Positions 8,414 through 58,967 of a stretch of 64,000 bases of DNA are shown here, in pieces. Positions within the stretch are counted from its first letter, which is position 1. Each line of letters starts with the position of its first letter. The position numbers and the translations under genes are program-made. The DNA is taken from contig OZ251242.1 in NCBI GenBank assembly GCA_965240325.2, positions 682,001-746,000 on the forward strand, in the 5' to 3' direction. A model generated the notes under the pieces. It was not told the DNA's origin and ran no database searches. It worked only from the letters and a program-made list of their open reading frames with translations. The DNA is from Rebecca billardiae RCC1528. Taxonomy: Eukaryota; Protista; Haptophyta.

Positions 8414-8544
8414 TCCACTAGCCCGATCATTCGACCGTAACCTCACCAGCAAGTAATCCCGCCCGGCAAGATAGTTGCAACATCCCCTCAGCAATATCCG
8501 ACGACCCCCTGCTCAACCCCCCTGAGCCAATTCCACAATGTCCA

Positions 8545-10351: not shown

Positions 10352-10356
10352 GCTTA

Positions 10357-11385
10357 ATGGGCAGGCCACCGGCAGGCCCAACGAGGAAGGTATCTACGTT
10401 GAAACAATTAGATTCAGTGGTCGAGACAGTGGTTCAGGCGGGAGTGGAGGCAAATACGACTCGGTCGTACAATACTGCAGTCAAGGCGTGGCTGCGATTC
10501 TGCGGCCAATACCATCTACGGCCGGATGGGTTTCACATTAACAAGCAATTTGAACGGTTTGCTGGGTTCCTGCTGGCCGCTGGGAATTTGGCAAATACGG
10601 TAAAGACGTACACAGGGGCGGTCCGAGCTTGGGCACGAGCGAGAGGTTATACCGTCTGCAAACGTAGCTTCGTTGAAAAACGGATCGTACAGTTTATAGA
10701 AGCGCAACACGGAAAGACCCCCCTAAGGAAGCGGGGACTGACGGCGGCTCAACTTTCGACAGTTTGTGCTCGGCTGAAGTTGTCCCGAGCGCACCGAGAT
10801 AAGATGTGGCTTGCATTAGTCACTGTGGCGACATTCGGGCTGCTACGGTCTGAACATTTCTCTGCAGGGGGACACTCCGCTGTGGGGCAGGGTACCAGAA
10901 TCATACACTGGGACGACGTGCTTTGGGACACAACGGGAAAAGGGATATTTATCATTCTACACCGTGGCAAACGACAGCGCGAGCCAGTGGGCGTCTGGCT
11001 ACCTAAGCTCACCAACACTTCAGGGGTGTGCTGCCCGGTGCGGGCACTGCGAGATTGGTGGCAGTACAGTCGCTCACGCCTCCGACGAGGTGAGGTACCG
11101 TCGGGGCCAGTCTTTAGTTCAGCCAAGTCAAGAGGCTGCCCCCTACCATATGAGGAGGCGCTAGGGTGGGCACACGCCCTCGGAGTCTCCCTGGGGTTGG
11201 GGGGTACGGCCCTCGGGACACATACATGGCGGCGTACAGGGTTATGGCTGGCAGAGTCGGCCAAATTGACGGAGGACGACTGCAAGCTTATTGGCAGGTG
11301 GCATTCGGGCGTGTGGCGATCCTACTCGTCTCAGGCTTTGCGGCGAGGCCAATTATGTGCTCGAATGGCAAAAGCACTCGGCTAA
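10357..11385 (+). CDS. Tyrosine recombinase
   Basis: Catalytic motifs FGLLRSEH, CPVRAL, HTWRRTG and GRWHSGVWRSY. ATG lies 5 nt after the RNase H stop. Confidence 0.93.
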   Translation: MGRPPAGPTRKVSTLKQLDSVVETVVQAGVEANTTRSYNTAVKAWLRFCGQYHLRPDGFHINKQFERFAGFLLAAGNLANTVKTYTGAVRAWARARGYTVCKRSFVEKRIVQFIEAQHGKTPLRKRGLTAAQLSTVCARLKLSRAHRDKMWLALVTVATFGLLRSEHFSAGGHSAVGQGTRIIHWDDVLWDTTGKGIFIILHRGKRQREPVGVWLPKLTNTSGVCCPVRALRDWWQYSRSRLRRGEVPSGPVFSSAKSRGCPLPYEEALGWAHALGVSLGLGGTALGTHTWRRTGLWLAESAKLTEDDCKLIGRWHSGVWRSYSSQALRRGQLCARMAKALG

Positions 11386-11982
11386 GGCTAGGCACTGGTC
11401 AGACATTGCGATTGATGCAACCGACCACGCCAAGGCTGGAAGCAAGCCCACTTGTCGAGTTATACACACGATCATAGATATATATATATATATATTTAAT
11501 TAATTAATGAATTTATTCACATATGACTCATTGACCGTTCCTGACAGTGCGTCGAGTGGCGGGACAGCAGTGGTCGCTAGTGTTAAACAGTAGTTGTGTT
11601 GTGCATTTTGTCAAACGATGACAGTCATTCGTGCTGACGGAGAATGCACCCCCCCCCCCCCCCTTGCCCTGCTCGCACAGGTACTTTGTACTACCGGATG
11701 CACAAATCGCATGCCAGTAGACATACAATCTATATTGTTATTGTTTGGGAGAGTGATCGAACCAGGAGCCCAACTCAGGCGGGAACTAGCAGTGTGCGGC
11801 CGAATATTGTGAGTAGTTTTTCCATCGATGACCACCATCGGTCCGTCCGCTCTACATGTGGGGGATAAACTGGACAGTGCGGTCAGAAGCCCTGGCTAGC
11901 GATAGTTGTTGCTGGTCCGATATGGAAGAACCGACCGACACAGTGATACTTATCAGTGTGTCGCTCCGGTCCATCCGGTTTG

Positions 11983-12518
11983 GGGGAATCGTTGTCTGTT
12001 GCCCAAGGTATCCACAGTCAGTGGGTCCCTGGCAAAAGACAATGACGAACAAGCAAATACTATCGCTTACTTCAGCGGTGACCATGGAGTCCGACTCTGC
12101 CCCAAAGAAAGCGGACGAATCATCGGATGGAACATTGCTGGTTCGGCATCAACATCAATATCAAGACTAGACCGCCCACAAGTTCAGAGACACTGTAACT
12201 TGCTTGAACAAACATTGGGCTCACCAATCGACCACTCCCGCGAAGCCGAGGTCAAATGTACAAACGTTGATGAACCTCGTCTCGCGGTGAGCCTCTGCTT
12301 TCTGCTTGCTCGCGTAAGGAGATGGCGGAGGCAAAGCCACTAACAATAACAAGGGCGCTCGGGCTGAAAGGCCCGGGCGTCCGCCCCCACACTCGTTCCG
12401 GTCGGGGGCCGCACATTAAAGCAAGGACGCAGTGGGGGGAGCGGGAACTTAGGCGCGCGCGCGCGCGCGCGCGGTAGTTTGCCAGCTGAGGACTAGCAGT
12501 GTTATTCTATCCGACTAA
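11983..12518 (+). repeat. Split direct repeat B1 (536 bp)
   Basis: 11983-12354 matches 13480-13851, and 12262-12518 matches 16844-17100. Confidence 0.93.
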
Positions 12519-13314
12519 CCCCTCTTAGACCACAGTGTCTAACGAGAACTTTAGTCGGGCCAACCGTCGGCGGCCCTTGGCAACATCGCCATTGACGGCC
12601 GGTAGAGGCCGGCAGTAAGGCAGGATCCAGGCGGAGGCTCTCACCAGAGTTGGCGGCGCCGCGCGCGCCGCGCGCGCACGCAAGGAGAGACACCATTCGG
12701 ATCGTAGCTGGCAGCCAAGGGCCCAGTAGGCAGCCGAACGCGTGAGGCCTCGGAGAGAGGTAGCTGGCAAATGGAACATCCAGGACGTACAAACGTACAC
12801 GGATGCAGCCGTACGGGCAATACGTATGATGCAGAGGTACACTGTCGCGCGACAGGAAGAGTGTGAAGTCGATCAGTCATCGCCGCCGCGCGCGCGCGCG
12901 CGCCAGTGCAGAAGGGAGAGGACAGGCGGAGCCGGGACCAAACGCGGAGCCCACGAAGGCAGAGGCTCGTGCGACACACGAGGATCACACGCCGCACGAG
13001 GACCGTGGCCGGGTGCGGCCCCCGAGCAGCGGGCAGAGGCGACCTATCGACGGTCGCCACACCGAGTGGCAGCCATTTCGTCCTGCGGCGAAGTCTTGCG
13101 GCCGGGCGCGCCTCCTGCGCCGCGCCCCTGGCGCGGAGCGTGGACGGGCGCAGGTTTGCGCCTCGCGCCGGCGCATCTTGGGCTCAAGCCCGTCGAAGAG
13201 CACGTGTTTGCGTCGCGCTTCGAAGGAGGGGGTTGGCAGCTCTTGTGGAGGAGGGCTCGGCGCGAGACGCTGTCGAGCAAGGGTCGCCTCCTTCCACAGG
13301 AATCAAAGCTCTTT
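12516..13314 (+). repeat. Split direct repeat A2
   Basis: Copy of 5053-5851, overlapping B1 by the TAA. Confidence 0.95.
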
Positions 13315-13479
13315 CCCGCCCACCCGCCCGCACGCATTTATTTTCGTTGTTACGGGATTCCATCAACCCGAATAAACAGGGCAGCGGTGCTTCTTTTCCG
13401 GCGAGCAAGCCGAGCCTGTTGAAGCCAATGAAAACGGCTTCAACAACCATCCTTGTTAACCAACGGACCGACGACAATT

Positions 13480-13851
13480 GGGGAATCGTTGTCTGTTGCC
13501 CAAGGTATCCACAGTCAGTGGGTCCCTGGCAAAAGACAATGACGAACAAGCAAATACTATCGCTTACTTCAGCGGTGACCATGGAGTCCGACTCTGCCCC
13601 AAAGAAAGCGGACGAATCATCGGATGGAACATTGCTGGTTCGGCATCAACATCAATATCAAGACTAGACCGCCCACAAGTTCAGAGACACTGTAACTTGC
13701 TTGAACAAACATTGGGCTCACCAATCGACCACTCCCGCGAAGCCGAGGTCAAATGTACAAACGTTGATGAACCTCGTCTCGCGGTGAGCCTCTGCTTTCT
13801 GCTTGCTCGCGTAAGGAGATGGCGGAGGCAAAGCCACTAACAATAACAAGG
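13480..13851 (+). repeat. Repeat B2, 5' part (372 bp)
   Basis: Matches 11983-12354. Confidence 0.93.
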
Positions 13852-14130
13852 AGGCCGTGCCGGCGTGCCGAGCAGCGCGACCACCTCGTCGGGCCCATGC
13901 TTCTGCACCATTGCGGCACGCCTCCGGGAAGGCGGCAGCTGCTTGCCGAGCGTGCCGATCGGTGCGGCTGCCGGCTGGCAAGCCCCTCGGTCGGAGTCGG
14001 TGCCGCAGCTGCAGTGCCCGGTGGCGTCTCTGAATCGGCGGCCCGATCGATGCCGGCGCTAGCTCGAACGCAAAGCTCGTCGTGATGATCGTTGGGAGAT
14101 CATCACGACGAGCCACGCTTCACGGCTTCA

Positions 14131-15825
14131 TCAGCCTGCACCGTCGCGGATCCTGGCCCTCCTGGCCATCACCACAGGTATGTCCTGTGGTTGCTGCCGT
14201 CGTGCTGCTCCCGCCGCCATGGATGGTGATGGTAGTCCTGGCAGACCCTGGTCGTAGATGCCATAGGCAGCCCGGACTGCGTTGTCACCTGCGTTGCCGG
14301 GCAGATGCCGCTCGTCCAGGGCCCAGGCATCATCATTGACCACCCCGTCATCAATCGAGTGGATCGTGCCATCTGACGAGCGCCAGCGGACGATGCTGAC
14401 AGCGACCAGCGGCGGCGGTGGGGAAAGCTGTGGCGCGGCATCCGAAACAGCGGCAACGCAGCTGGTGGATTTGTGCTGTCGCTTCGCTGCGCGCGTGCCC
14501 TGGTCGCCGGTGCCATGCTCCAGCCCGCGCTTGGGGACGGCGAGCCGACCGCCAACCATGCCGGCCAGCTTGTGCGTAGCGCACCGGCTGGCGCGCGCGT
14601 CGCCCGGCATGCCAAAGGTAGGCCGTGTGGTGCAGCCGGCGTGATCACACCTGGGGCTCCTCAAGTCGACCATGCCGGCCAGCGTGTGCGCAGCGCACCG
14701 GCTGGCGCGCGCGTCGCCCGGCATGCCGAATGAAGGCACCGTGGTGCAGCCGGTATGATCACACTTGGGGCTCCTCACGTCGACCATGCCGGCCAGCTTG
14801 TGCGTAGCGCACCGGCTGGCGCGCGCGTCGCCCGGCATGCCGAACGCAGGCTGCTTGGTGCAGCCCGCGTGATCACACTTGCGGCTCACCACGTCGACCA
14901 TGCCGGCCAGCTTGTGCGCAGCGCACCGGCTGGCGCGCGCGTCGCCCGGCATGCCAAACGAAGGCACCGTGGTGCAGCCGGTATGATCACACTTGGGGCT
15001 CTTCACATCGACCATGCCGGCCAGCTTGTGCGCAGCGCACCGGCTGGCGCGCGCGTCGCCCGGCATGCCGAAGTAAGGCCGCGTGGTGCAGCCCGCGTGA
15101 TCACACTTGCGGCTCACCACGTCGACCATGCCGGCCAGCCTGTGCGCAGCGCACCGGCTGGCGCGCGCGTCGCCCGGCATGCCGAACGCAGGCTGCTTGG
15201 TGCAGCCCGCGTGATCACACTTGGGGTTCTTCACGTTGATCATGCCGGCCAGCTTGTGCGTGGCGCACCGGCTGGCGCGCGCGTCGCCCGGCATGCCGAA
15301 CGCAGGCTGCTTGGTGCAGCCAGCGTGATCACACTGGCGGCTCACCAAGTTGACCATGCCGGCCAGCTTGTGCGTAGCGCACCGGCTGGCACGCGCGTCG
15401 CCCGGCATGCCAAACGAAGGCACCGTGGTGCAGCCGGTATGATCACACTTGGGGCTCTTCACATCGACCATGCCGGCCAGCTTGTGCGCAGCGCACCGGC
15501 TGGCGCGCGCGTCGCCCGGCATGCCGAAGTAAGGCCGCGTGGTGCAGCCCGCGTAATCACACTTGGGGTTCACCACGTTGGCCATGCCGGCCAGCTTGTG
15601 CGCAGCGCACCGGCTGGCGCGCGCGTCGCCCGGCATGCCGAACGCAGGCTGCTTGGTGCAGCCCGCGTGATCACACTTGGGGTGCTTCACGTCGATCATG
15701 CCGGCCAGCTTGTGCGTGGCGCACCGGCTGGCGCGCGCGTCGCCCGGCATGCCGAACGCAGGCTGCTTGGTGCAGCCCACGTGATCACACTTGCGGCTCT
15801 TCACGTCGACCATGCCGGCCAGCAT
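14131..15825 (-). CDS. EsV-1-7-like cysteine-rich repeat protein (11 x 38 aa)
   Basis: ATG-to-TGA 564-aa ORF. The 114-bp units encode CDHAGCTKQPAFGMPGDARASRCATHKLAGMVDV, i.e. the C-x4-C...P.FG..G......C..HK..GM pattern of EsV-1-7 repeats. A basic NLS-like stretch follows. Confidence 0.85.
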   Translation of the reverse strand: MLAGMVDVKSRKCDHVGCTKQPAFGMPGDARASRCATHKLAGMIDVKHPKCDHAGCTKQPAFGMPGDARASRCAAHKLAGMANVVNPKCDYAGCTTRPYFGMPGDARASRCAAHKLAGMVDVKSPKCDHTGCTTVPSFGMPGDARASRCATHKLAGMVNLVSRQCDHAGCTKQPAFGMPGDARASRCATHKLAGMINVKNPKCDHAGCTKQPAFGMPGDARASRCAAHRLAGMVDVVSRKCDHAGCTTRPYFGMPGDARASRCAAHKLAGMVDVKSPKCDHTGCTTVPSFGMPGDARASRCAAHKLAGMVDVVSRKCDHAGCTKQPAFGMPGDARASRCATHKLAGMVDVRSPKCDHTGCTTVPSFGMPGDARASRCAAHTLAGMVDLRSPRCDHAGCTTRPTFGMPGDARASRCATHKLAGMVGGRLAVPKRGLEHGTGDQGTRAAKRQHKSTSCVAAVSDAAPQLSPPPPLVAVSIVRWRSSDGTIHSIDDGVVNDDAWALDERHLPGNAGDNAVRAAYGIYDQGLPGLPSPSMAAGAARRQQPQDIPVVMARRARIRDGAG

Positions 15826-15911
15826 TGCATTATCATAGGGAGCAAGGGTGGTCGTGGGAGTTCTTCACTCTGAACTCGCCAGACTGGCGGCGACTGCGCA
15901 TCCTTGGCGCA

Positions 15912-16661
15912 TCACTGAATTCGAGATCTAGGCGGGCGGGCGGCTCGGGAGTCGGGCGGGCAATACAGTAAGTAAGCTTTTGGAATGGCGTCGGTCCTCA
16001 CGCAGGCTGTGGTGCAACCTGGCCGGAGCCAGATCGCTGCGTGCACGTCGTGGGCATCGCGTTTGAGTAGCGTCTCGAGCTGCCGCACGCGTTGATCACA
16101 CGCCTTGCGATGAGCGTCGATCGGGTAGAAATGTGAACGAGGCTTCCCACATCGTTTGGATTCATACGCAGCAGCAAGTAGGGCGATGTCCGGCGGCGCG
16201 CTGCGGCACGGGTGCAGCTTGGAGAGCAATGCGCGTACACGAGGAAGATGCTCACCGAGGATGTGTTCGAGCGAATGGTGCGGCCGGGCGACGACGTCAG
16301 CTGCACTGCGTGCTGCATCGATCGATGTGGCCGAACCACGGAACATGGAAGGTGCAGGTGAAGACGGACTGGGTGCAACGGCGCTGGCGTGATCGCGTAC
16401 GATCGTGTGCTTGCCAGCGGCGCGCTCCGTGCCGATCATGACATCGCCGTGCATGGTGACGTCGTTATCTGCTGGTGATCGCGCAGCGCGTGCGCATGCG
16501 AGGGCTCGCTGGGCAGATGCGCTGGATGCGAGTATGCGACGAGGGTGCAGGGGAAAGGGAGAGTTTTCGTGCACGTCCGGTCGTCCGGGCCCTATCTTGT
16601 AATCGACGTACCCGTTTACATATTCGATCGGATTACGACCGTCTAGGCACCATTTATTCAC
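15912..16661 (-). CDS. Hypothetical protein (second cargo ORF)
   Basis: 249-aa ATG-initiated ORF of ordinary composition, co-oriented upstream of the EsV-1-7 ORF. No family recognised. Confidence 0.45.
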   Translation of the reverse strand: MNKWCLDGRNPIEYVNGYVDYKIGPGRPDVHENSPFPLHPRRILASSASAQRALACARAARSPADNDVTMHGDVMIGTERAAGKHTIVRDHASAVAPSPSSPAPSMFRGSATSIDAARSAADVVARPHHSLEHILGEHLPRVRALLSKLHPCRSAPPDIALLAAAYESKRCGKPRSHFYPIDAHRKACDQRVRQLETLLKRDAHDVHAAIWLRPGCTTACVRTDAIPKAYLLYCPPDSRAARPPRSRIQ

Positions 16662-16843
16662 AACAGATTGGGGTGCATAGCAGAGTTCATTCCTTTATAG
16701 AGTTGCAAAATATGGCGGGCTATGTGCGCACCGGTCGTAAAGCATATCTCGCCATTCTTTGTATTATCTGGATATATCACAGCCAATCTTGAACCAAATG
16801 AGAATTTCTCAAATTCTCAAAAGTTCGTAGCCTATAGAGGGGT

Positions 16844-17100
16844 AAACGTTGATGAACCTCGTCTCGCGGTGAGCCTCTGCTTTCTGCTTGCTCGCGTAAG
16901 GAGATGGCGGAGGCAAAGCCACTAACAATAACAAGGGCGCTCGGGCTGAAAGGCCCGGGCGTCCGCCCCCACACTCGTTCCGGTCGGGGGCCGCACATTA
17001 AAGCAAGGACGCAGTGGGGGGAGCGGGAACTTAGGCGCGCGCGCGCGCGCGCGCGGTAGTTTGCCAGCTGAGGACTAGCAGTGTTATTCTATCCGACTAA
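16844..17100 (+). repeat. Repeat B2, terminal part (257 bp); right end of the element
   Basis: Matches 12262-12518 and ends in TAA. Confidence 0.93.
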
Positions 17101-17158
17101 TGAGCACGTTATTTGCGCTGGTCGCTTCCTCGCTGCAGGAGCCCAACATCAGCCACAC

Positions 17159-20100
17159 ATGACTGACCGCGCGGACGCCTCCCCGCTCGCGAAGCTCGCC
17201 GAGGTGTGGGGGCGAGGCGACGTGGCGGCGCTGCTCGAGGCGAGCGAGGTGGACCTTTCTGACAAGCAGTCGGTCTCCGAGGGCGTGGAGTGGCAGGGCG
17301 TGCTCCAGCTGGTGGAAACGTCGAGACACCTCGAGACACTCAACCTCACGTGTGCGCACGCGGCGGGGCAACGTGGGGCGTGCACGCGGAGGCGCATGGG
17401 CACAACATGGCGCGCGTGTGGCACGCGGATCGGGGCGTGTCGGCGCCGCTTCGGGCGCCGCGCCGCCGCCGCCGCAAACGCCGCATACGGTCCTCACGAC
17501 GGCGCGCGCGCGCAAGCGCACGCGTCGGCGCACGCGCGCTGATGCGTGCGCGCGCGGCGGGGGCGTGGGCGCGCGCAGCGCGCGCGTGCATGCTGCACCG
17601 CGCGCGCCGTCTCACACGCCGCTCAGCCGCGCCCCGCCCCGCGCCCGCCCCTGCGCGCAGTGGCACCGGCGTGGGTGACGAGGGTGCCGCGCAGCTCGGC
17701 GCCGCCCTCGCGTCGGGCAAGACGCGCCTGCGGGAGCTGTACCTCTTGTGAGCGCTGGGGAGTGCGCGGCGCGCGGCGCGTGGACGGTGGGCAGCGGGGA
17801 GGCGGGCTGGCGGTGGCATGCTCCATCATGCGCACCGCAGCGCACGAGCTCGGGCCGCCGCGCGCGCGCGGGGCGCCGAGCGCAGCGCCGAGCGCCGCGC
17901 CACCGCCGCCGTGCGCGCCGCGCGCGGCGGCGGTGGCGCGGAGGCGGCGGCGGCGCGCGCGCGCAAGCGCACGCGTCGGCGCACGCGCGCCGATGCGTGC
18001 GCGCGCGGCGGGCGCGCGTGCGCGCGTGGCGCGCGCGTGCATGCTGCACCACGCGCGCCGTCGCACACGCCGCTCAGCCGCGCCCCGCCCCGCGCCCTCC
18101 CCTGCGCGCAGTGGCACCCGCGTGGGTGACGAGGGTGCCACGCAGCTCGGCGCCGCCCTCGCGTCGGGCAAGACGCGCCTGCGGGAGCTGCACCTCAAGT
18201 GAGCGCTGGGGAGTGCGCGGCGCGTGGACGGTGGGCGGCGGGGAGGCGGGCTGGCGGTGGCATGCTCCAGCATGCGCACCGCAGCGCACGAGCCCGGGCC
18301 GCCGCGCGCGCGCGGGGCGCCGAGCGCCGCGCCGAGCGCCGCGCCACCGCCGCCGTGCGCGCCGCGCGCGGCGGCGGTGGCGCGGAGGCGGCGGCGGCGC
18401 GCGCGCAAGCGCACGCGTCGGCGCACGCGCGCCGATGCGTGCGCGCGCGGCGGGGGCGCGGGCGCGCGCGGCGCGCGCATGCATGCTGCACCACGCGCGC
18501 CGTCGCACACGCCGCTCAGCCGCGCCCCGCCCCGCGCCCTCCCCTGCGCGCAGTTACACCCGCGTGGGTGACGAGGGTGCCACGCAGCTCGGCGCCGCCC
18601 TCGCGTCGGGCAAGACGCGCCTGCGGGTGCTGAACCTCACGTGAGCGCTGGGGAGTGCGCGGCGCGCGGCGCGTGGACGGTGAGCGGCGGGGAGGCGGGC
18701 TGGCGGTGGCATGCTCCATCATGCGCACCGCAGCGCACGAGCCCGGGCCGCCGCGCGCGCGCGGGGCGCCGAGCGCCGCGCCGAGCGCCGCGCCACCGCC
18801 GCCGTGCGCGCCGCGCGCGGCGGCGGTGGCGCGGAGGCGGCGGCGGCGCGCGCGCGCAAGCGCACGCGTCGGCGCACGCGCGCCGATGCGCGCGCGCGCG
18901 GCGGGGGCGCGGGCGCGCGCAGCGCGCGCATGCATGCTGCACCACGCGCGCCGTCGCACACGCCGCTCAGCCGCGCCCCGCCCCGCGCCCTCCCCTGCGC
19001 GCAGTTACTGCCGCGGCGTGGGTGACGAGGGTGCCACGCAGCTCGGCGCCGCCCTCGCGTCGGGCAAGACGCGCCTGCGGGGGCTGGGCCTCAGGTGAGC
19101 GCTGCGGAGTGCGCGGCGCGTGGACGGTGGGCGGCGGGGAGGCGGGCTGGCGGTGGCATGCTCCATCATGCGTACCGCAGCGCACGAGCTCGGGCCGCCG
19201 CGCGCGCGCGGGGCGCCGAGCGCAGAGCCGAGCGCCGCGCCACCGCCGCCGTGCGCGCCGCGCGCGGCGGCGGTGGCGCGGAGGCGGCGGCGGCGCGCGC
19301 AAGCGCACGCGTCGGCGCACGCGCGCCGATGCGTGCGCACGCGGCGGGGGCGCGGGCGCGCGCGGCGCGCGCGTGCATGCTGCACCACGCGCGCCGTCGC
19401 ACACGCCGCTCAGCCGCGCCCCGCCCCGCGCCCTCCCCTGCGCGCAGTCGCACCGGCGTGGGTGACGAGGGTGCCACGCAGCTCGGCGCCGCCCTCGCGT
19501 CGGGCAAGACGCGCCTGCGGGAGCTGGACCTCCGGTGAGCGCTGGGGAGTGCGCGGCGCGCGGCGCGTGGCCGGTGGGCGGCGGGGAGGCGGGCTGGCGG
19601 TGGCATGCTCCATCATGCGCACCGCAGCGCACGAGCTCGGGCGTCCGCGCGCGCGCGGGGCGCCGAGCGCCGCGCCGAGCGCCGCGCCACCGCCGCCGTG
19701 CGCGCCACGCGCGGCGGCGGTGGCGCGGAGGCGGCGGCGGCGCGCGCGCGCAAGCGCACGCGTCGGCGCACGCGCGCCGATGCGTGCGCGCGCGGCGGGG
19801 GCGTGGGCGCGCGCGGCGCGCGCGTGCATGCTGCACCACGCGCGCCGTCGCACACGCCGCTCAGCCGCGCCCCGCCCCGCGCCCTCCCCTGCGCGCAGTG
19901 TCACCGGCGTGGGTGACGAGGGTGCCGCGCAGCTCGGCGCCGCCCTCGCGTCGGGCAAGACGCGCCTGCGGGAGCTGAGCCTCAGGTGAGCGCTGGGGAG
20001 TGCGCGGCGCGCGGCGCGTGGACGGTGGGCAGCGGGGAGGCGGGCTGGCGGTGGCATGCACCATCATGCACACCGAGGCGCACGAGCTCGGGCGTCCGCG

Positions 20101-23100
20101 CGCGCGCGGGGCGCCGAGCGCAGCGCCGAGCGCCGCGCCACCGCCGCCGTGCGCGCCGCGCGCGGCGGCGGTGGCGCGGAGGCGGCGGCGGCGCGTTCGC
20201 GCAAGCGCACGCGTCGGCGCACGCGCGCCGATGCGTGCGCGCGCGGCGGGGGCGCGTGCATGCTGCACCACGCGCGCCGCCGCACACGCCGCTCAGCCGC
20301 GCCCCGCCCCGCGCCCTCCCCTGCGCGCAGTCGCACCAACGTGTCTGGCGAGGTCCAGGCACGCGTCGATGAGGCCGTTGAGGCGAACAAGGCGCGGCTG
20401 CAGCAGGAGCCGCCCAGGTGCAAGCGGCGGGGGGGGCACAACGCGCCGCGCCCGTGCACGCGCGGCGCGGGCGGGAAACCGGGCAGCGGCTGGGGGCGAT
20501 TGGCCGCCCGTTGCGCAGCGCATCGCGGCTCTGCCGTTGCGCGCCCGCGGCGCGCGCTCCGCCGCCGCTCACGCGCGCCTCTCGCCGTGCCCTCGGCCGG
20601 CGCGCGCGCAGTGACGACTCTGCTGACGACTCGGCCTCTGGCGATGAGCCTGAGGACGAGGAGGCGGAGGCGGCGGAGGACGAGGCGGAGAAGGCGAGTG
20701 CGCGCGCGCGCGCCGAGGCCGCCGCCGCGGCGGGTGGCGCCTCCGACGCGCCCCGCGGCGTCGACCGCCTCGGCTTCCTCGCCATGGCCGTCGCGCTCGT
20801 GCAGACGGTGCTCGCTGTCGTGAAGAGCTCCGACGCCTCGCTGTGCGTCGGCATCTACGCGCCGTGGGGCGGCGGCAAGTCGTTCTTCCTCAACGCGTTC
20901 GTGCTGCGGCTCGAGGCGTGCCACCGCGTGGAGGATGTGCGTGCGCTGTGGGCGTGGGTGCGGCGCGAGAAGACATCTCTCGACCCACCGCCCAAGCCGG
21001 GCGAGTCCCGCGCGGTGGACGCGCTCGTGCGCGCGCTGCGCGCCGCGCTGCGCCACGGGTACGTCAACCAGGAGGAGAAGAGCGAGCTGCGCGCTCTCGT
21101 GTCGTCCAACAAGGGCTTGCGCGAGCGGGCGGCGGCCGCGGAGGCGGAGGGCGAGCGCCGTGTTGAAGACGACGAGGAGGTGGAGCTGCCTGCGCTGATG
21201 GACCCCGACTGGCTCGCACGGCTGGTGGTGCTCACGCTGCGCGGCTGGCTCGCCTTTGGGCGCGACGTGCGCAGCGCGCAGGCGGCGATGTGCAGCACGC
21301 TCTGGTGGCCCGCGCGCTCACTGCCCGCGCGTGCGGGGCGAGTGGTACCCACGAGTACTGCCGACAGTGAGCAGGAGTATCAGCTGTTGCCCGGCGGCGG
21401 CGGCGCAGCGGACGACGAGAAGGAGCTGCCGAGCGAGTCGCAGCCTGGCGCGCGTGCGGACGCTGCGCCGCTCACGGACGAGGAGCGCTCGCGCGCCGAG
21501 GTGCTCGCGGTGCGCGCCGCGCTGCTGTGTCTCGGCACGCAGCTCGTGCTGCTGCTGCTGCTCGTCTTCGGCATGCTCGCGGTCGTGCTTGCGATTGTGT
21601 GGCAGCCGCCCACGCTCTACGCCAACGCGGTGCCGCCGCCCTGGCCGGCGGTGGTGGGGCTAGTGCTGCTCGGCGGCGCGTGTGTCGGCGCGAGCGCGCT
21701 GCTCCCCGTGGGCGCCGCGTGCGCGCGCATCCGTCTGAGTCGCGGCGCGGCTCCCCACGAGGCGCGGACGCGCGACAAGCAGCTGGCGCTACACGCTTTC
21801 CAGCTGCTCGCCGGCAGCACCCAGCCGCGCGGCGCGCTCGACGATGGGGAGCCCCACGCGGCCGAGGCCGAGTCTGCCGGCGACAGCGTGGAGGGGCGAG
21901 CGCGCTGGTTTGTGCTGCTCGTCGCGCGCCGCAGCATGCTCGGCTGGATCGAGGCTGCACAGGCGCTGAGCGGCGTCGTCGGCATGCTCGGTGCGTGCCT
22001 GTCGTGCTGCGGCTGCTGGCGCTGCGGCCTCGGCCCCTCGCGCCCTCGCGCCGCGCAGCGGATGCCGCTGGGCGCCACCATGCACGTGAACGTCGTCTTC
22101 AACGCGTGGCTCTACTCGGGCGCGGACAACCTGTGGGCGGCGATGACGCTCGCGATGTGGGACGCGATCGAGCGCAAGCTCGGCAAAGACGCTGTGCGGC
22201 GGCACCGTGCGACCATCGAGCTGTCGCGCCGCCTTGCCGACGAGACGGATGCGGACGACTTGGCCACGCGCCTCGGGAAGCGGCGCGAGGCTAAGCGCAT
22301 CGCCATGCTGCGCTTCTTCAACGCGGCGCTCGCTGTGCCAGTCGTCTTTGTCGTGGCGTGGGCCATCTTCGAGGCGGTGGTCACGCGCGTGGTGTGCGCA
22401 GACGGCAGCGGCGCGTCGGATGCGGGCGTGGCTGCCGAGCTGTGCACGTGCGTGGCCGACGCCGCGCTGCAGGCGTCGGAGAGCGGCGGGCTGCTGCCGT
22501 GGGGCCAAGCGTGGTGGTGCGCAGCCGACCGGCTGTCGGTGTTGCTGCCGTCCTCGTTTGTCGCGCTGCTACCGCTGGGCGCACGCACGCTCGCGTACGC
22601 GCGCATCGTGCGCCCCTTCCTGACGCAGTCGCAGGGCGACGTGCTGTATGCCGAGGCGAAGGCGCTGGGCAGCTCGGACGCAGGGCTCTCCGCCCTCGGC
22701 TTCATGGCGAAGGTGAAGGCGGAGGTGCGCCACCTGTACGACTGCATCGGCACGACGCGCTACGTCGACACGGAGATCGGCTGCGAGCGGAAGCTGCGGC
22801 TGCTCGTCACCGTGGACGACCTCGACCGCTGCCCGCCCGAGATGGTGGTGCCCGTGCTCGAGGCGCTCATCCTGCTCCTCGCCAACGACGCGTCGATGGT
22901 GGGCGGCGGCCAGGATGCGCACGCGCCGATCACGGCGCTCCTCGCGATCGACCCGCGCGTCGTGACGAGCGCGATCGTCTCGATGCAGCGGGTGCTGCGC
23001 GAGGCGCACATCACGGGCGAGGAGTACCTCGCCAAGATCGTGCAGATCCCGTTCTGCTTCCCGCGGATGCAGCCGACCAAGATGGCAGCGTACGTGCGCT

Positions 23101-26100
23101 ACCTCGTGGGCGGCAAGCCGAACCCACGCCTGCTGCTGCAGCGCGCGTGCGAGGTCGTCGCAGCGATGCCCACCATCGGCGGCGCCCCATCCTCGGACGA
23201 TGCCGCGCTGCGCATGCTGGGCCAGCTCGTCGCGCAGCTCTTTGACGCCGAGCGCGTGGCGTCGCGGCCCGAGCGCGTGCTCGAGCTCGGCATGCCCGAG
23301 CACGAGATGGCCAAGATCGTCGCCCGCGAGGGTGAGCGCGCCAACCCGGCGCTGCTGGCGCAGTTCAGCGCGCTCGTCGAGGAGATGCTCGAAGGGCTCG
23401 AGAGCGACGGCGAGGACGAGGCGGCCAAGGCGCGCCGGCTGCAGCGCGAGCTGCTCGATGCGGCCGAGAGCGGGCCAGAGGACGAGACCCCCGCTACTCC
23501 CCTTGCCCCGCTCGCAGCGGACGAAGGGGAGGGCAGCGCCCCAGCGGTTCGCGAGCCGGCCGCCATTGAGGCCGCGCAGCCGCGCGCGCTGCCTCCGATG
23601 CCCAGCCTCGCGCCCGACGCCAGCCACTCGTTTTGGCTCGCTCGGCCGCGCGCTCTCGTGGACAACAAGGGTGTGCCGCAAGGGGAGCGCATGCCTCATT
23701 CGGCCGGAAGGGGCGTCGATCTCGTCGTCAACGCGTCTGCTGCGTGCCAGCTGCTCACGCTGCCGAGCGCAGACGCGGTCGCCGACGAGAAGCAGCAGCC
23801 GGCAGCGGCGCGCTGGCTGCGCGTGCTGCCCGCTGCGCGCGAGGGCGGGCGCTCTGAGCCCATCCTCGGCGTGTGCTTCTCGCCGTCGGGCAGCCTGCTC
23901 GCCTCCGCCGGCAACGACGGCGCTGTGCAGCTGTGGGACAGAAGCTCGACCCAGGACGCGCGCCGCGTGCTCTCTGGCCACGAGGGCGCCGTCAACGCCG
24001 TTTGCTTCTCGCCCTCGGGCCTCGCGCTCGCTTCCGGCGGCGCCGACCGGAAGGTGCGGCTGTGGGACCCGACCAAGGCCAAGCAGCTGCGCGCGCTCAA
24101 GGGCCACTCGGGCAAGGTCTTGTCGGTGCAGTTCTCGCCCTCTGGCACCTTGCTCGCCTCCGGCGGCGCCGACGGCACTGTGCGGCTGTGGGACGCCGAG
24201 GCCGGAGCAGAGCTGCGCGTGCTCAAGGGGCACGAGGGCGCCGTCCGCGCCGTGTGCTTCTCTCCTTCGGGCAACGTGCTCGCCTCCGCTGGTGCCGACC
24301 CAACGGTGCGGCTGTGGGGATCCGAGGCGGGCACGCAGCTGCGCGCGCTCGACGGCCACACGGACGGCGTCACCGCGCTGCAGTTTGCACCGTCGGGCGA
24401 AATGCTCGCCTCGGGCGGCGCCGACGGCACACTGCGGCTGTGGAAACCGACCGCACACGAGCCCTTCCGATTGCTCGAGGGCCACGCAGGTGCCGTCGCG
24501 GCCGTGTGCTTCTCGCCCTCGGGCGCTCTGCTCGCCTCCGGCGGCGTGGACCAGACGGTGCGTCTGTGGGACTTTGCCGGGCTGGCCGAGGCGCCAGAGG
24601 CGCCCCAGGCGCGCACGCTCGGCAAGCACGTTGGCAAAGTCACGTCGGTGCACTTTGCGCCCTCCGGCGACGTGCTCTGCTCTGGCGGCGCCGACGGCAG
24701 CTTGCGCGTATGGCCTATCAGTGCGTCCTCGCTCGCGCCCGCCATCGCGTGCCGCGTCTCGCTCGAGAAGCCGGACGCGAGCGTGTGGCGCCTCTCCACA
24801 GCCGGAGGCGGCGCGGAGGCCGGCACTGCTGTGGTGGTGCACTTCGAGAGCGGCTGGCAGCAGCAGGTGGTGCTCGTGCCCGCGGCGGGCGCGCCCAGCC
24901 GGCCCCAGGCCGAGCCAGCGGAGCAGCGCGTCCTCGGCGCCATCAGCCTGCGCTTCGAGCTGCTCGGCCCGGACAGGCGCGCCGTGCGCGGCGCGACGCG
25001 CGTGCGCGCGCTCAAGTGGCTCGCGCAGACGGACAGCGCGCGGGTGGAGGCACTCGAGCGCGCGGCAGCGCCGGTGCTGCCCGCGCGCGAGCGCGAGATG
25101 CTGGGCGAGCTGGTGCGCTACATCGACGGCAACCCGCGCCGCGTGAAGCGCATCGTCAACGTGCTGTCCGTCGCGCGGGGCGTGGCACAGCAGCTGGTGG
25201 GCAAGCAGCTCGAGCAGCACGAGCCCTTTGTGCGCAAGCTGATCGCGCTCGTCGTGCTGCTCGAGCAGTGGCCGCACCGGATGGCGTGGCTGCTCACCGC
25301 GGTGGAGAACGTGCAGCAGCTGCGTGAGACGCTGCGCGCTGTCGTCGCCGACCCCGAGCGCGACGAGGACGACCACAGGTGGATTGCTGATGCGCTCAGG
25401 CAGCGGCTGTACCACCTCGAGGGCGCGCACGCGTGGCGGACGGAGATGCTCGCTGTGCGCATCTTCGAGGCGCGCATCGAGCCGATGCTGCACGCACCCG
25501 AGTCTGCGAAGCAGCAGCTCGCACTCGACTCGGACCCCGAGCTCTTCATCGCGCTCCTCGAGCACTCCAAGCTCACCGTGCGCGACCTGCTGCAGCCCAG
25601 GTGGCGCACCAGTGCGTACGCTGCCACCGCGGAGGCGGCGGCGGCGCAGGCCACGGAGGCGGCCGCGGCGCCGGCCGCTGCGCCGGCGGCCGCCGTGGCG
25701 GATGCGGAGCGCCCCATCCTCGAGCCGCCGCCCACCGAGTTTGCGCTGTGCACGTACACCTTCAACCTCAGCCCGGGCGTGCTCGCGCAGGCGGTGCGCG
25801 ACATAGACACGCTGATGCTCACGGACGGCGACACTGCCGCCGAGTCGTCGCAGCCGGCAGCGGAGGGTGCGCCGGCGGCGGACGACGGCGGTGGAGCCGG
25901 CACGACGCCCGCCGCGACGATGATTGGCAGCGGTCGGCGCATGCAGGGCCGCTACCGGCGCAAGCACTCCGTCTACGCGGACACACAGCAGAAGGGCGGC
26001 GGCGAGAGCGGCGAGCTCGTCGCGCTGCTGCGCGAGCAGATGCAGGAGCAGCAGCAGCAGATGCGCGAGCAGATGCAGCAGATGCGCGAGCAGATGCAGG

Positions 26101-26327
26101 CGCAGCAGACGGCTCGATCCGCAGCAGGGTGGCGGCGAGAGTGGCGAGCTCGTCGCGCTGCTGCGCGAGCAGATGCAGGCGCAGCAGCAGCAGATGCGCG
26201 AGCAGATGCAGCAGATGCAGGCGCAGCAGCAGCTGCTGCGCGAGCAGATGCAGATGCAGGCGCAGCAGAAGGCTCCGCAGCAGGGCGGCGGCGAGAGTGG
26301 CTAGCTCGTCGCGCTGCCGCGCGCTGA
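17159..26327 (+). CDS. LRR - transmembrane KAP-family P-loop NTPase - WD40 protein (spliced)
   Basis: Predicted exons 17159-17349, 17661-17747, 18112-18198, 18554-18640, 19005-19094, 19448-19534, 19899-19985, 20331-20417, 20612-26327, all introns GT-AG phase 2. RI-like LRRs (VGDEGATQLGAALASGKTRLRELxL), Walker A GIYAPWGGGKSF, FNAWLYSG, TM helices, Walker B VTVDDLDRC, YLAKIVQIPF, 7 WD40 repeats and GNPRRVKRIVN. Confidence 0.85.
17500..20340 (+). repeat. Tandem array of ~450-bp intron+LRR-exon modules
   Basis: Exon starts are spaced 451, 442, 451, 443, 451 and 432 bp, and the introns are near-identical. Confidence 0.95.
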
Positions 26328-26352
26328 GCAGATGCAGGCGCAGCAGCAGCAG
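25985..26352 (+). repeat. Gln-rich coding tandem repeat (QQGGGESGELVALLREQMQ...) in ~3 copies
   Basis: ggcggcgagagYggcKagctcgtcgcgctg recurs three times. A 4-nt insertion near 26116 shifts the frame relative to the repeat. Confidence 0.8.
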
Positions 26353-27730
26353 ATTGAGCCGCGCGCTCTCCGGCTGGGCGCAGCGCGCGGCCGCGGCACG
26401 CGCGCTGCGCGCCGCCACCGCCGCCGCCGCCTCCGCCGCGCCCTCCGCCGCGCTCGCGGCGTGGCGCGGCGCGGCGGCGGCGACCGCGTGCGCGCGCGCA
26501 GACGACGGGCGCGCACGCGCGCACGCGGCGCGCGCGGCCGAGCGCGCGGCGCGCGGCGCGCTGCGCGCGTGGCGCAAGGCTGGGCGTGTGTGACGCGTCA
26601 TGACGTGACGTCACGTCATGACGTCATGACGTGACGCGAGGAATGGCGTAACGTGACGCCCGGTCAGCGCTCTGCCCACGCCTGGCACACCCGGACTCAC
26701 AGTAGTGCCACAGCCGGCTTCGCGCGCGCGCGCGCGCGCGCCGCGTTGGCGCCGCGGTGCCGGGCGGCGGTGCAGCCCTGCCCCAACGTACTACAGGCAA
26801 TCGCGGGCAATAAGAAGTCAGATCTCACGGCTACAGTAGTCTCGGTTTCTTATAGCCGTTCGGTAGCCCGACCGCCTACGGAGTCTCAGTTTCTTAGTAG
26901 CTAGGTCCGCCCGCCGCGCAGGCGCGGGGGGCCGGCCGAGGGCCGGCTGAGCCCCCCGCTGAGTCTTTAGGCCGGCCGGCGAGGCCGAAGAAAAAAAATA
27001 ATTGGGCCATTTTATTGGCGGAGCAGCAAATCTGGCATGATGTTGCATGGCGGATGCTGCGGTGCACTGGCCAGGAGTCAGTCATCAGGAGAAGTCGGGA
27101 ATCCTCAGGCCTGTACTCGTAGTCGGGCCGCGCGCCGCCGGTCCCACGGGCACTGCGCCTCGGCGGACCTGACTCGTCAGCAGCGACGACATAGTCCCGG
27201 TTTCTTAGTGTGACTATGCGTATAGCGAACCAGCCGCCAATCGCTAGTCTTAGTTTCTAGGCCAGATCCGCAGATATCAAGCCCCAGTTTCTTATAACGT
27301 GACAGCTCCTTATTGCCCGCGATTGCCTGTACGTATCCCCTTACCGCAGTTCAATCTGCTTCGTATGGAAGCAGATTTGACGGCGGCCGCTGCGCGCGCT
27401 TTGCGGCCCGCACCCACGCGCGCCTGGGCGTTGAACACTACTGCTTGCGAGAGTGTCAAGGCATGGTCTAGTAGTCGTCTACTGTAGCTACCGCCTCATC
27501 AGACAGCCGCCAGCCTACGGAGTACCTGTCCAGATTCACCGCCGTAGTATAGTCCACCGGATGATGGCAACGCGCGGCGCGCGGCGGCGCCGAGCAGCTG
27601 CCGTCGTGCTGGCTGGGCACTCGAGTGGCCCGCGACACCCGGCTGCACTCCTTGCAGCCGCTTCCAGCACGTGGGCGACTACCGACGACAAAGATGATGA
27701 TCGTATAAACAGCGCGCATGCATATATCCG

Positions 27731-48706: not shown

Positions 48707-48906
48707 CGTGTTGGGCTTCGAACCGGCGTCCGCCGGCGATGCGTCGACGAGCTTCGTCGGCTCGAGTGGCAGCGGTCGCTCGAGGACCAAGCCCACGATC
48801 GGACTGCTCGAAGCAGTCCGGCGCGGCGCCGCGGGCCGTGGCGAGCCGGACCACTGCCACCATGCGCAACGGTGAACACTCAAAAGTATGGATCTGGATG
48901 AAATAT

Positions 48907-58877: not shown

Positions 58878-58967
58878 TACTACGACTATCGAAACGAAAC
58901 CGGATGCTGCGCCAGGGCGATGGCCGATGGGCGTGGGTGCTGCCATGTCGTCCGCTGCGTGCCGCGT

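What the first reader, a model, noticed from the sequence alone, without database searches (positions are those of the whole stretch)
17159..20417. Cassette array of same-phase LRR exons hypervariable only at the ligand-binding strand, split across the splice junction
Seen: six LRR exons (87 bp, one 90 bp) plus an 87-bp capping exon, all phase 2-2, in ~450-bp modules with near-identical introns. The helix-coding core GDEGA(A/T)QLGAALASGKTRLR is identical between copies even at synonymous sites. The codons flanking each intron differ by multi-base changes: TLNLT|GTG, ELYLF|GTR, ELHLN|YTR, VLNLT|YCRG, GLGLS|RTG, ELDLR|VTG, ELSLS|RTN. Known: these are the solvent-exposed x positions of LxxLxLxx on the concave face, and one-LRR-per-exon shuffling has been described for brown-algal ROCO genes. 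Inference: this is a diversifying recognition system. Exon skipping or unequal crossover between the identical introns keeps the frame and joins the half-strand of one cassette to that of another, creating new binding surfaces. It is a candidate algal immune receptor in a different lineage and on a different NTPase.
Basis: partly seen in the sequence, partly recalled or inferred. Interest (0 to 1): 0.9.

Follow-up and report, generated by a model that had tools for sequence, protein, structure and literature searches.

The report
Tandem LRR exon array on KAP NTPase
A gene of a very GC-rich alga-like eukaryote has copied one leucine-rich-repeat exon with its intron six times, and the copies differ almost only at the residues expected to touch a ligand. 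This gene design is already known from brown algae and vertebrate NOD-like receptors, but here it sits on an unusual membrane-embedded KAP ATPase.

Summary
Exons at 17159-20417 (191 nt, five of 87, one of 90, then an 87-nt cap) all have phase-2 GT..AG introns. They join to a 5.7-kb exon to give one 2172-aa reading frame. Six exon+intron modules of 432-451 bp are about 93-97% identical. The 62-nt helix core has one variable site. The eight codons spanning each splice junction carry 20 minimal changes in 24 nt, 11 times the intron rate (P 8e-15), and none at third codon positions.

Only the spliced junction peptides match Pfam LRR_6. A two-repeat peptide matches ribonuclease inhibitor best (E 2.6e-17). 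The downstream exon is a KAP P-loop NTPase with about four membrane helices and a WD40 propeller inserted in the domain.

My best reading is germline tandem amplification and exchange, plus selection for different concave-face residues in a cytosolic sensor domain. I found no RNA, strain or orthologue data, so exon skipping and an immune role remain untested.

The layout is published for brown-algal ROCO genes and vertebrate NLRs. The repeat-evolution pattern is published for fungal het-d/het-e. This scan has already noted at least eight similar LRR arrays elsewhere in the same genome. The new element is the KAP-WD40 partner and the lineage.

The parts
17159..17349 (+). Exon 1: start codon, N-terminal cap and one divergent LRR, ending ...ETLNL-T(2 nt)
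   Evidence: First in-frame ATG after upstream stops. GC1/2/3 is 0.75/0.41/0.89, typical of coding sequence here. The nearest atlas clusters carrying a Pfam family are LRR_6 (a lead only).
17350..17660 (+). Intron 1 (311 nt, phase 2). Its last 164 nt are the left edge of the repeat array.
   Evidence: 94% identical to the 3' part of intron 2.
17497..20337 (+). Tandem array of about 6.3 copies of a 432-451-bp unit (intron 3' part + LRR exon + intron 5' part)
   Evidence: TRF period 451, 93% matches. Module alignment; array edges.
17661..17747 (+). Exon 2, LRR cassette, 87 nt, phase 2-2
18112..18198 (+). Exon 3, LRR cassette, 87 nt, phase 2-2
18554..18640 (+). Exon 4, LRR cassette, 87 nt, phase 2-2
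19005..19094 (+). Exon 5, LRR cassette, 90 nt (one extra codon in the strand-to-helix loop), phase 2-2
19448..19534 (+). Exon 6, LRR cassette, 87 nt, phase 2-2
19899..19985 (+). Exon 7, LRR cassette, 87 nt, phase 2-2
20331..20417 (+). Exon 8, 87 nt: last half-strand (RTN) plus the C-terminal capping helix. An old, diverged relative of the cassette.
   Evidence: Only weak DNA similarity to exon 7; in frame.
20418..20611 (+). Intron 8 (194 nt, phase 2), unrelated to the array introns. It has no stop when read through in the exon-8 frame.
20612..26327 (+). Exon 9: acidic linker; KAP P-loop NTPase (Walker A APWGGGKS at protein residue about 354, Walker B VDDLDRC at about 1002) with hydrophobic segments 579-597, 614-632, 719-737 (weak) and 840-858; seven WD40 repeats; KAP C-terminal GNPRRVKRIVNV region; Gln-rich tail.
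   Evidence: Pfam KAP_NTPase E 9.5e-22 and WD40 E 3e-80. Hydropathy. The post-WD40 part aligns to the KAP C-terminus of P0017 with E 4e-19. A homologue about 50% identical lies on metagenome contig L001.
16844..17100 (.). Terminal 257-bp repeat of a 12-kb retroelement, ending 58 nt before the start codon (context, not part of the gene)
   Evidence: 100% identical copy at 12262-12518; scan note s1-367785.

Best explanation
This is the N-terminal, cytosolic sensor domain of one large gene. It has eight ribonuclease-inhibitor-type leucine-rich repeats, followed by a membrane-embedded KAP P-loop NTPase that carries an inserted WD40 propeller.

Six of the repeats come from a single ancestral exon that was amplified together with its intron as a ~450-bp tandem unit, by unequal crossing-over in the germline. 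The copies have since been kept alike by recency, by continuing exchange between modules, or both.

Selection has made or kept five solvent-exposed positions of each repeat different (x3, x5, x7, x8, x10 of LxxLxLxx(T)xV). These positions lie on the strand and the loop after it, on the concave binding face. Each intron sits after the second base of codon x7, so every repeat's binding strand is assembled from two exons. Any gain, loss or skipping of a cassette keeps the frame and the fold.

Shown here: the gene structure (by sequence logic only), the repeat class, the KAP/WD40 partner and the distribution of variation. Inferred: that the LRR binds a variable or multi-part ligand and gates NTP-dependent switching of the membrane NTPase, by analogy with NLR/STAND receptors and with PifA-type KAP defence proteins. 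No immune role has been tested.
For: Gene model. The exons form one 2172-aa ORF. Codon-position GC of the LRR exons (0.775/0.524/0.888) equals that of exon 9 (0.764/0.534/0.885), while the introns are flat at about 0.84. Read-through of introns 2-7 hits a stop at the second codon. The KAP reading frame has no ATG upstream of its conserved GVDRLGFLA...WGGGKS region, which is conserved in the homologue L001, so it needs upstream exons.

Splicing logic. Single-exon peptides hit no Pfam family. Junction-spanning peptides hit LRR_6 and nothing else, with E 0.015, 4.5e-4 and 0.012.

Repeat class. The best solved-structure match is ribonuclease inhibitor 1dfj (E 2.6e-17), followed by RNH1, RanGAP1, NLRX1, NOD2 and NLRP5.

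Variation. Strand pN is 0.38 and pS is 0, against intron diversity 0.028 and core 0.009. There are 20 minimal changes in 24 nt, all at codon positions 1 and 2, an 11-fold excess with P 8e-15.

Exchange between modules. Four-gamete incompatibilities occur among sites outside the strand codons, and the terminal modules are the most diverged.

Topology. There is no signal peptide and no membrane segment before Walker A. About four hydrophobic segments lie between Walker A and Walker B.

Precedent. PMC6642158, PMC3341825, PMC11378527, PMC1805685 and PMC13001434 (the last states that KAP ATPases often carry repeats thought to sense).
Against: There is no transcript evidence of any kind: no runs were listed and no protein of this species is in the databases. 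A young 12-kb retroelement ends 58 nt before the start codon and may have disturbed the promoter. The intron-8 junction to the KAP exon rests only on frame, splice consensus and the missing ATG. No orthologue with an LRR region could be recovered, because L001 starts after it, so positive selection is inferred from paralogous repeats within one gene only. pS = 0 is weakened as a neutral yardstick by the extreme GC3 bias. Position 9 of the repeat is Thr/Cys rather than the canonical Asn/Cys.
Confidence: 0.65

Rival explanations
1. This is an old array under concerted evolution with a fixed partner. The repeats are ancient, and short-tract gene conversion keeps introns and helix cores alike. The strand residues are each conserved because each repeat contacts a different part of one constant ligand, which could be an internal partner such as the protein's own WD40 or NTPase domain. 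On this reading there is no arms race and no repertoire.
For: Four-gamete incompatibilities show exchange between modules. The outer modules and the flanking exons E1 and E8 are the most diverged, as in homogenised arrays. RI-type LRRs commonly serve as autoinhibitory or housekeeping binding domains: the matches include RanGAP1, radial spoke and dynein regulatory proteins.
Against: Conversion tracts would have to stop within a few bases of both exon edges in every module. That still needs selection against homogenised strands. The data cannot separate 'kept different' from 'driven apart'.
Confidence: 0.2
2. One reading: the array works as a combinatorial generator in the individual. Regulated or stochastic exon skipping joins half-strands of different cassettes, or frequent mitotic unequal crossover does so, and yields many receptor isoforms.
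For: All cassettes are phase 2-2 and 29-30 codons long, so any skipping is in frame and rebuilds a hybrid strand. All donor and acceptor sites and introns are near-identical. The introns are strongly structured (z -3.75), so pairing between neighbouring introns is conceivable. Alternative splicing of such LRR exons is documented in human NLRP3 and in brown-algal ROCOs (PMC6642158, PMC11378527).
Against: No RNA data exist to show any isoform. The design is a precondition for skipping, not evidence of it. With only six cassettes the isoform space is small. No donor or orphan cassettes lie nearby.
Confidence: 0.1
3. The LRR array is not part of the KAP gene, or the gene is dead. It could be a separate small LRR-only gene (retention of intron 8 gives an open frame to 20823), or a locus silenced by the retroelement inserted just upstream.
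For: Intron 8 has no stop in the exon-8 frame. The retroelement ends 58 nt before the ATG with 100% identical repeats, so the insertion is recent.
Against: The KAP frame lacks its own start codon upstream of conserved sequence. All nine exons are intact, with no frameshift or stop in 6.5 kb. Coding-type GC periodicity is the same throughout.
Confidence: 0.08
4. The pattern is a mutational hot spot at exon-intron borders or an assembly artefact of a collapsed or expanded repeat.
For: None directly. GC-rich tandem repeats are hard to assemble.
Against: All 20 changes are at codon positions 1 and 2 and none at position 3 (P 3e-4 under a uniform hot spot). The adjacent splice signals are invariant. 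The modules differ by specific indels and substitutions, which artefactual copies would not show.
Confidence: 0.03

Closest known systems
Brown-algal LRR-ROCO (and NB-ARC-TPR) candidate receptors, Ectocarpus and kelps (Zambounis et al. 2012, PMC3341825; Teng et al. 2024, PMC11378527)
   Same: One LRR per exon, equal exon length and symmetric phase. Tandem exon duplication or shuffling. Positive selection concentrated on concave-face residues. An NTPase partner. Proposed algal immune receptors, with alternative splicing of cassettes reported.
   Different: There the exons are 72 nt (24-aa plant-type LRR) and phase 0, on a ROC-COR GTPase, with orphan and inverted cassettes in the introns. Here they are 87-nt RI-type repeats, phase 2, with the border inside the strand, on a KAP NTPase with membrane helices and WD40. 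No orphan cassettes occur in 64 kb. The host is not a brown alga.
Vertebrate NLR and RNH1 RI-type LRR genes (Hoss et al. 2019, PMC6642158)
   Same: The same LRR class. There is strict exon modularity, with one 28-aa LRR per exon in NOD/NLRC genes. The exon-exon border always falls at the same place within the beta-strand. The exons are frame-preserving, which is described as a precondition for alternative splicing.
   Different: Those LRRs sit C-terminal to a NACHT domain, and the exons are old and diverged, with unrelated introns. Here the LRRs are N-terminal to a KAP NTPase and the modules, introns included, are 93-97% identical. Whether the intron position is exactly homologous was not tested.
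Fungal het-d/het-e (HNWD) WD-repeat allorecognition genes (Paoletti, Saupe and Clave 2007, PMC1805685)
   Same: Repeats are nearly identical to each other through concerted evolution and repeat exchange. A few residues per repeat on the interaction surface are under positive diversifying selection. The repeats sit on an NTPase-containing receptor.
   Different: Those are WD40 repeats, not LRRs, with no intron per repeat. Exchange also occurs between ten paralogous genes, and strain polymorphism is demonstrated there. Neither could be examined here.
KAP family P-loop NTPases (Kidins220/ARMS, PifA; summarised in PMC13001434; KAP among DGR-diversified sensors in PMC10907252)
   Same: The Pfam KAP_NTPase match is above threshold, with membrane helices between Walker A and Walker B. 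The family is known to carry repeat domains thought to sense, and PifA is an anti-phage abortive-infection protein. Database KAP proteins with WD40, M23 or BspA-type LRR_5 domains exist.
   Different: I found no KAP protein with RI-type LRRs, and no paper holding both 'KAP NTPase' and 'leucine-rich repeat'. The WD40 propeller here is inserted inside the KAP domain.
[quoted passage not shown]
   Same: LRR cassettes with hypervariable concave-face positions.
   Different: VLRs are assembled somatically from hundreds of flanking donor cassettes by gene-conversion-like copying. No donor cassettes are present here, and nothing indicates somatic change.

Membership tests
RI-type (ribonuclease-inhibitor-like, Pfam LRR_6) leucine-rich repeats | Repeat length of 28-29 residues | tested here: met
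   Five repeats of 29 aa and one of 30 aa.
RI-type (ribonuclease-inhibitor-like, Pfam LRR_6) leucine-rich repeats | Consensus LxxLxLxx(N/C)xLxxxgoxxLxxoL (as given in PMC6642158) | tested here: met
   The repeat reads L-R-x-L-x-L-x-x-(T/C)-x-V-G-D-E-G-A-x-Q-L-G-A-A-L. Position 9 is Thr in most repeats and Cys in one, a mild departure from the consensus.
RI-type (ribonuclease-inhibitor-like, Pfam LRR_6) leucine-rich repeats | Significant sequence match to solved RI-class proteins or to the family model | tested here: met
   Porcine RI 1dfj at E 2.6e-17, followed by RNH1, RanGAP1, NLRX1, NOD2 and NLRP5. LRR_6 is the only Pfam hit for junction peptides, at 15.8-20.5 bits each. That is below the 23.4-bit whole-protein cut-off for a single repeat.
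One-LRR-per-exon shuffling arrays of the brown-algal ROCO type | Each LRR on its own exon, with equal length and symmetric phase | tested here: met
   87 or 90 nt, phase 2-2.
One-LRR-per-exon shuffling arrays of the brown-algal ROCO type | Excess amino-acid change on the concave face | tested here: met
   pN 0.38 against intron diversity 0.028, restricted to x3, x5, x7, x8 and x10. This compares repeats within one gene only; no site-model test across orthologues was possible.
One-LRR-per-exon shuffling arrays of the brown-algal ROCO type | Orphan, inactivated or inverted cassettes in introns or nearby | tested here: not met
   Only the six expected copies, all on the + strand, at up to 3 mismatches in 64 kb.
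One-LRR-per-exon shuffling arrays of the brown-algal ROCO type | ROC-COR GTPase partner | tested here: not met
   The partner is KAP_NTPase plus WD40.
One-LRR-per-exon shuffling arrays of the brown-algal ROCO type | Transcript evidence for cassette skipping | not testable with these tools
   No sequencing runs were listed.
Vertebrate NLR-type LRR exon modularity | Exon border at a fixed place inside the beta-strand, with frame-preserving exons | tested here: met
   The border falls after the second base of codon x7 in all seven junctions.
Vertebrate NLR-type LRR exon modularity | NACHT NTPase N-terminal to the LRRs | tested here: not met
   No NACHT domain is present; the LRRs are N-terminal to a KAP domain.
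KAP family P-loop NTPase | Match to the family model above the curated threshold | tested here: met
   PF07693 at 78 bits against a cut-off of 20. Walker A region; C-terminal motif region.
KAP family P-loop NTPase | Membrane helices (two or four) between the Walker A and Walker B motifs | tested here: met
   Hydropathy peaks at 579-597, 614-632, 719-737 (weak) and 840-858, between residues 354 and 1002. This is a hydropathy estimate only.
Highly internally conserved repeat receptors of the fungal HNWD type | Repeats near-identical at the DNA level, with a few hypervariable surface codons | tested here: met
Highly internally conserved repeat receptors of the fungal HNWD type | Repeat number and order polymorphic between strains; exchange between paralogues | not testable with these tools
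   No other strain or paralogue sequence was obtainable.
Somatically assembled LRR receptors (VLR type) | Banks of donor cassettes flanking an incomplete germline gene | tested here: not met
   The gene is complete in the germline and no extra cassettes are present.

The most novel reading that the evidence does not exclude
The array could be one node of a genome-wide LRR-cassette diversification system in this alga. Near-identical, strongly structured introns would promote frequent unequal exchange, or the looping-out of cassettes during splicing. Strains or even cells would then carry different binding faces on a membrane KAP NTPase that acts as a defence or cell-death switch, for instance against viruses. 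That would be an NLR-like immune receptor class built on a different NTPase in a lineage where none is described.
Probability: 0.1. Interest if true: 0.75.

Novelty: new variant of a known kind. Interest (0 to 1): 0.4.

Why it matters
If the reading holds, this is an unusually clean case of a binding domain growing by exon-plus-intron duplication. The introns serve as an internal neutral yardstick, and the adaptive changes are confined to about five positions per repeat.

It extends the "one repeat per exon, variable concave face" design to RI-type repeats outside animals. It also extends it to a KAP NTPase with membrane helices and an inserted WD40 propeller, a partner for which I found no description with RI-type LRRs.

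Together with the other LRR arrays noted in the same genome, it suggests that this alga invests heavily in rapidly evolving intracellular and surface LRR sensors. That is relevant to how unicellular algae recognise viruses and other partners.

It does not by itself reveal a new diversification mechanism.

Tried and rejected
- **RNA and DNA reads.** The look-up of sequencing runs listed none for 17100-21100, so read laying could not be used.
- **Exact search of the 63-nt core in metagenome contigs.** No match.
- **Metagenome scan with a KAP N-terminal alignment.** Only one close relative turned up, contig Ga0181565_10028249 (L001 = L002). It begins at about residue 303 of this protein, so it lacks the LRR region. 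The other 79 loci are generic KAP P-loop matches.
- **Word-index protein searches.** The KAP region and its N-terminal 300 aa found no close relative and no self hit.
- **Single-exon peptides, and a 28-column profile of them.** No hit in Pfam or the PDB. The LRR motif spans the splice junction. Short junction-spanning peptides copied then worked.
- **Structure prediction of the LRR domain.** Not run, because the spliced protein has no reference and I did not type long repetitive sequence.
- **Checking the lineage.** A prolyl oligopeptidase gene in the window found best hits at 68-76% identity, all unnamed metagenome proteins. The 'pavlovophyte haptophyte' label in earlier scan notes is therefore unverified by me.
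- **Rfam scan of 16800-20800.** Nothing found.
- **Upstream exons before the retroelement (2700-5100).** No LRR-like or other convincing coding ORF.
- **A clean two-module (about 893-bp) duplication.** The alternating 451/442-bp lengths suggested it, but M1-M3 and M2-M4 are no closer than their neighbours, so I rejected it.
- **The KAP founding paper.** It is not held in the library.
- **The 2008 NLR review.** It did not contain the exon statement I recalled.

Full report
**What is there**

The window is very GC-rich, at 0.54-0.83 per 2 kb. Between 17159 and 20417 I confirm eight short exons with canonical GT..AG introns, all in phase 2:
- E1 17159-17349
- E2 17661-17747
- E3 18112-18198
- E4 18554-18640
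- E5 19005-19094 (90 nt)
- E6 19448-19534
- E7 19899-19985
- E8 20331-20417

Joined to a ninth exon (20612-26327), they give one uninterrupted reading frame of 2172 residues.

Tandem Repeats Finder reports a 451-bp unit, 6.4 copies and 93% matches at 17500-20337. The left edge of the array lies in the middle of intron 1, whose last 164 nt are 94% identical to intron 2. The right edge lies at the first bases of E8. E1 and E8 are old, diverged LRR-like flanks. E2-E7 are the amplified cassettes.

**Is the gene model credible without RNA?**

No sequencing run could be listed, and no protein of this organism is in the protein collections. The model therefore rests on sequence logic, and four points support it.

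1. GC at codon positions 1/2/3 is 0.775/0.524/0.888 in the LRR exons and 0.764/0.534/0.885 in exon 9. All eight introns are flat at 0.79-0.89 in every frame.
2. Reading through introns 2-7 meets a stop at the second codon.
3. Single-exon peptides match no Pfam family. Peptides that span the predicted junctions match LRR_6 and nothing else, with E 0.015, 4.5e-4 and 0.012. The motif exists only after splicing.
4. The KAP reading frame has no ATG upstream of its conserved GVDRLGFLA...WGGGKS segment. The part of that segment from VQTV through the P-loop aligns with homologue P0013. On contig L001 the similarity to this protein reaches back to about its residue 303, upstream of the segment. The frame therefore needs upstream exons.

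Two cautions remain. Intron 8 is open in the E8 frame as far as 20823. A retroelement with 100% identical repeats ends 58 nt before the start codon.

**What kind of repeat**

A two-repeat spliced peptide finds porcine ribonuclease inhibitor as its best solved relative (1dfj, E 2.6e-17). It is followed by other RNH1 proteins, a designed LRR, radial spoke protein 15, RanGAP1, NLRX1, NOD2 and NLRP5.

The unit is 29 residues: L-R-x3-L-x5-L-x7-x8-(T/C)-x10-V-G-D-E-G-A-(A/T)-Q-L-G-A-A-L-A-S-G-K-T-R. This fits the RI-class consensus quoted in PMC6642158. The intron lies after the second base of codon x7 in every junction.

**Distribution of variation**

In the alignment of the six modules:
- The 62-column helix core has one variable column.
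- The introns have 27 variable columns out of 364, with pairwise diversity 0.028.
- The eight codons x3..x10 across the six internal junctions have pN 0.38 and pS 0, and nucleotide diversity 0.28.
- Those codons carry at least 20 mutations in 24 nt, 11.2 times the intron density (Poisson P 8e-15).
- All 20 are at codon positions 1 and 2 (P 3e-4 if positions were hit evenly).
- The two Leu codons inside the stretch are invariant.

Variable positions are x3 (E/V/G), x5 (Y/H/N/G/D/S), x7 (F/N/T/S/R), x8 (G/Y/R/V) and x10 (G/R/N), with position 9 changed once (T to C). By established knowledge of LRR structure, these are the solvent-exposed residues of the strand and the following loop on the concave face. 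I did not model the domain.

Relaxed constraint cannot exceed the neutral rate. A mutational hot spot would not spare third positions and the adjacent splice signals. Selection on amino-acid identity is therefore required, whichever way the homogeneity of the rest arose.

**How the homogeneity arose**

Two histories fit the data.
- **Recent amplification.** Intron divergence of about 3% dates the copies, and the strand has been driven apart since.
- **An older array kept alike.** Unequal crossing-over or short conversion tracts homogenise it, while selection removes homogenised strands.

Informative sites outside the strand conflict with each other: columns 32 or 136 against 199/200, and 199/200 against 227. 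At least one exchange between modules, or a recurrent mutation, has therefore occurred. The outer modules are the most diverged.

A 7-bp deletion shared by modules 2 and 4 lies in a tandem 7-mer and may be recurrent. A clean two-module duplication is not supported. I cannot separate the two histories without other strains or species.

**The rest of the protein**

Exon 9 encodes a KAP family P-loop NTPase (PF07693, E 9.5e-22, 78 bits against a cut-off of 20).
- The Walker A region (APWGGGKS) matches profile positions 13-40, and a large split match covers positions 51-232.
- Walker B is VDDLDRC.
- Four hydrophobic segments lie between the two motifs: 579-597, 614-632, a weak one at 719-737, and 840-858.
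- Seven WD40 repeats follow (E 3e-80).
- The region after them aligns with the C-terminal end of the KAP domain of a WD40-less homologue, including GNPRxxKRIxNV (P0017, E 4e-19). The propeller is therefore inserted within the KAP domain, as scan note s1-367841 proposed.

There is no signal peptide and no membrane segment before Walker A. The LRRs should therefore be cytosolic, like the NTPase.

An exhaustive search found one close homologue. P0013 is 57% identical and lies on a 4.1-kb, 75% GC metagenome contig. That contig carries the KAP and WD40 parts but begins after the LRR region. More distant KAP proteins carry 12-14 WD40 repeats, a peptidase M23 domain or a BspA-type LRR_5 domain.

**Mechanism proposed**

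By analogy only. The LRR face, and perhaps the propeller, binds a ligand. That binding switches the NTPase, whose membrane insertion suggests a membrane-level output, as described for PifA (summarised in PMC13001434). KAP ATPases are said there to carry repeats "thought to perform sensing". KAP NTPases also occur among bacterial sensors diversified by retroelements (PMC10907252).

**Comparison with what is known**

- One LRR per exon, tandem exon duplication, concave-face positive selection and cassette skipping are published for brown-algal ROCO genes (PMC3341825, PMC11378527).
- For RI-type LRRs, strict exon modularity is published for human NLRs. The border always falls at the same place in the strand and the exons preserve the frame. 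This was explicitly described as a precondition for alternative splicing (PMC6642158).
- Near-identical repeats with a few positively selected surface residues, maintained by repeat exchange, are published for fungal het-d/het-e (PMC1805685).
- This scan has already recorded at least eight other one-LRR-per-exon arrays in the same genome, with the same verdict.

What I did not find described:
- RI-type LRRs on a KAP NTPase. No paper holds both terms, and no such protein is among the Pfam-scanned KAP-matching hits.
- This layout in this lineage. Earlier notes call it a pavlovophyte haptophyte. My own check only shows that its nearest relatives in the databases are unnamed.

**Verdict**

It overstates novelty, and it goes beyond the evidence on exon skipping and immunity.

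I rate it a new variant of a known kind, with moderate interest.

Noticed in passing
window 5053-17100, ends at 12262-12518 / 16844-17100 and 5053-5352 / 12516-12815: A 12-kb element with 100% identical internal and terminal repeats ends 58 nt before the start codon of the LRR-KAP gene. Earlier scan notes call it a tyrosine-recombinase retrotransposon. The insertion looks recent and could affect the gene's promoter.
   Followed up: partly
window 17100-17162: A short upstream ORF (ATG at 17100) ends in a TGA that overlaps the main ATG. A CAG preceded by a pyrimidine-rich run at about 17136-17138 could be an acceptor for an unseen 5' exon.
   Followed up: no
window 23870-24716 and 24750-25862: The seven-blade WD40 propeller lies between the KAP Walker B region and the KAP C-terminal GNPRxxKRIxNV region. 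It is therefore an insertion inside the NTPase domain.
   Followed up: partly
L001 (JGI metagenome contig Ga0181565_10028249, 4132 bp, 75% GC): This is the only close homologue of the KAP-WD40 part, about 50% identical. It shows frame changes that look like introns at about 196-550 and 2943-3038. A related GC-rich eukaryote therefore exists in an environmental sample.
   Followed up: partly
P0104 (1365 aa): A database protein with an N-terminal BspA-type LRR_5 domain followed by a KAP NTPase. LRR-KAP fusions with another LRR class therefore exist elsewhere.
   Followed up: no
window 17748-18111 and every array intron: The 85% GC introns fold far better than shuffled controls (-290 kcal/mol, z -3.75) and contain long near-perfect hairpins. 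Because all the introns are alike, the same arms could pair between neighbouring introns.
   Followed up: partly
window 14555-15823: A 114-bp tandem repeat, 11 copies at 89% identity, lies inside the retroelement within a 564-aa minus-strand ORF.
   Followed up: no
window 25988-26395: The C-terminal tail of the KAP protein has Gln/Met/Glu/Arg-rich tandem repeats (REQMQQ...-type), probably forming a coiled coil.
   Followed up: no
window 54703-57000 and 58915-61150: A segmental duplication spaced about 4.2 kb apart (81-100% identical blocks) covers two ORFs of 646 and 628 aa. The 646-aa ORF had no Pfam match; the 628-aa ORF was not scanned.
   Followed up: no
window 47363-48883 (-): Prolyl oligopeptidase gene (N-terminal propeller domain, E 4.5e-85). 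Its best database relatives are unnamed metagenome proteins at 68-76% identity.
   Followed up: partly
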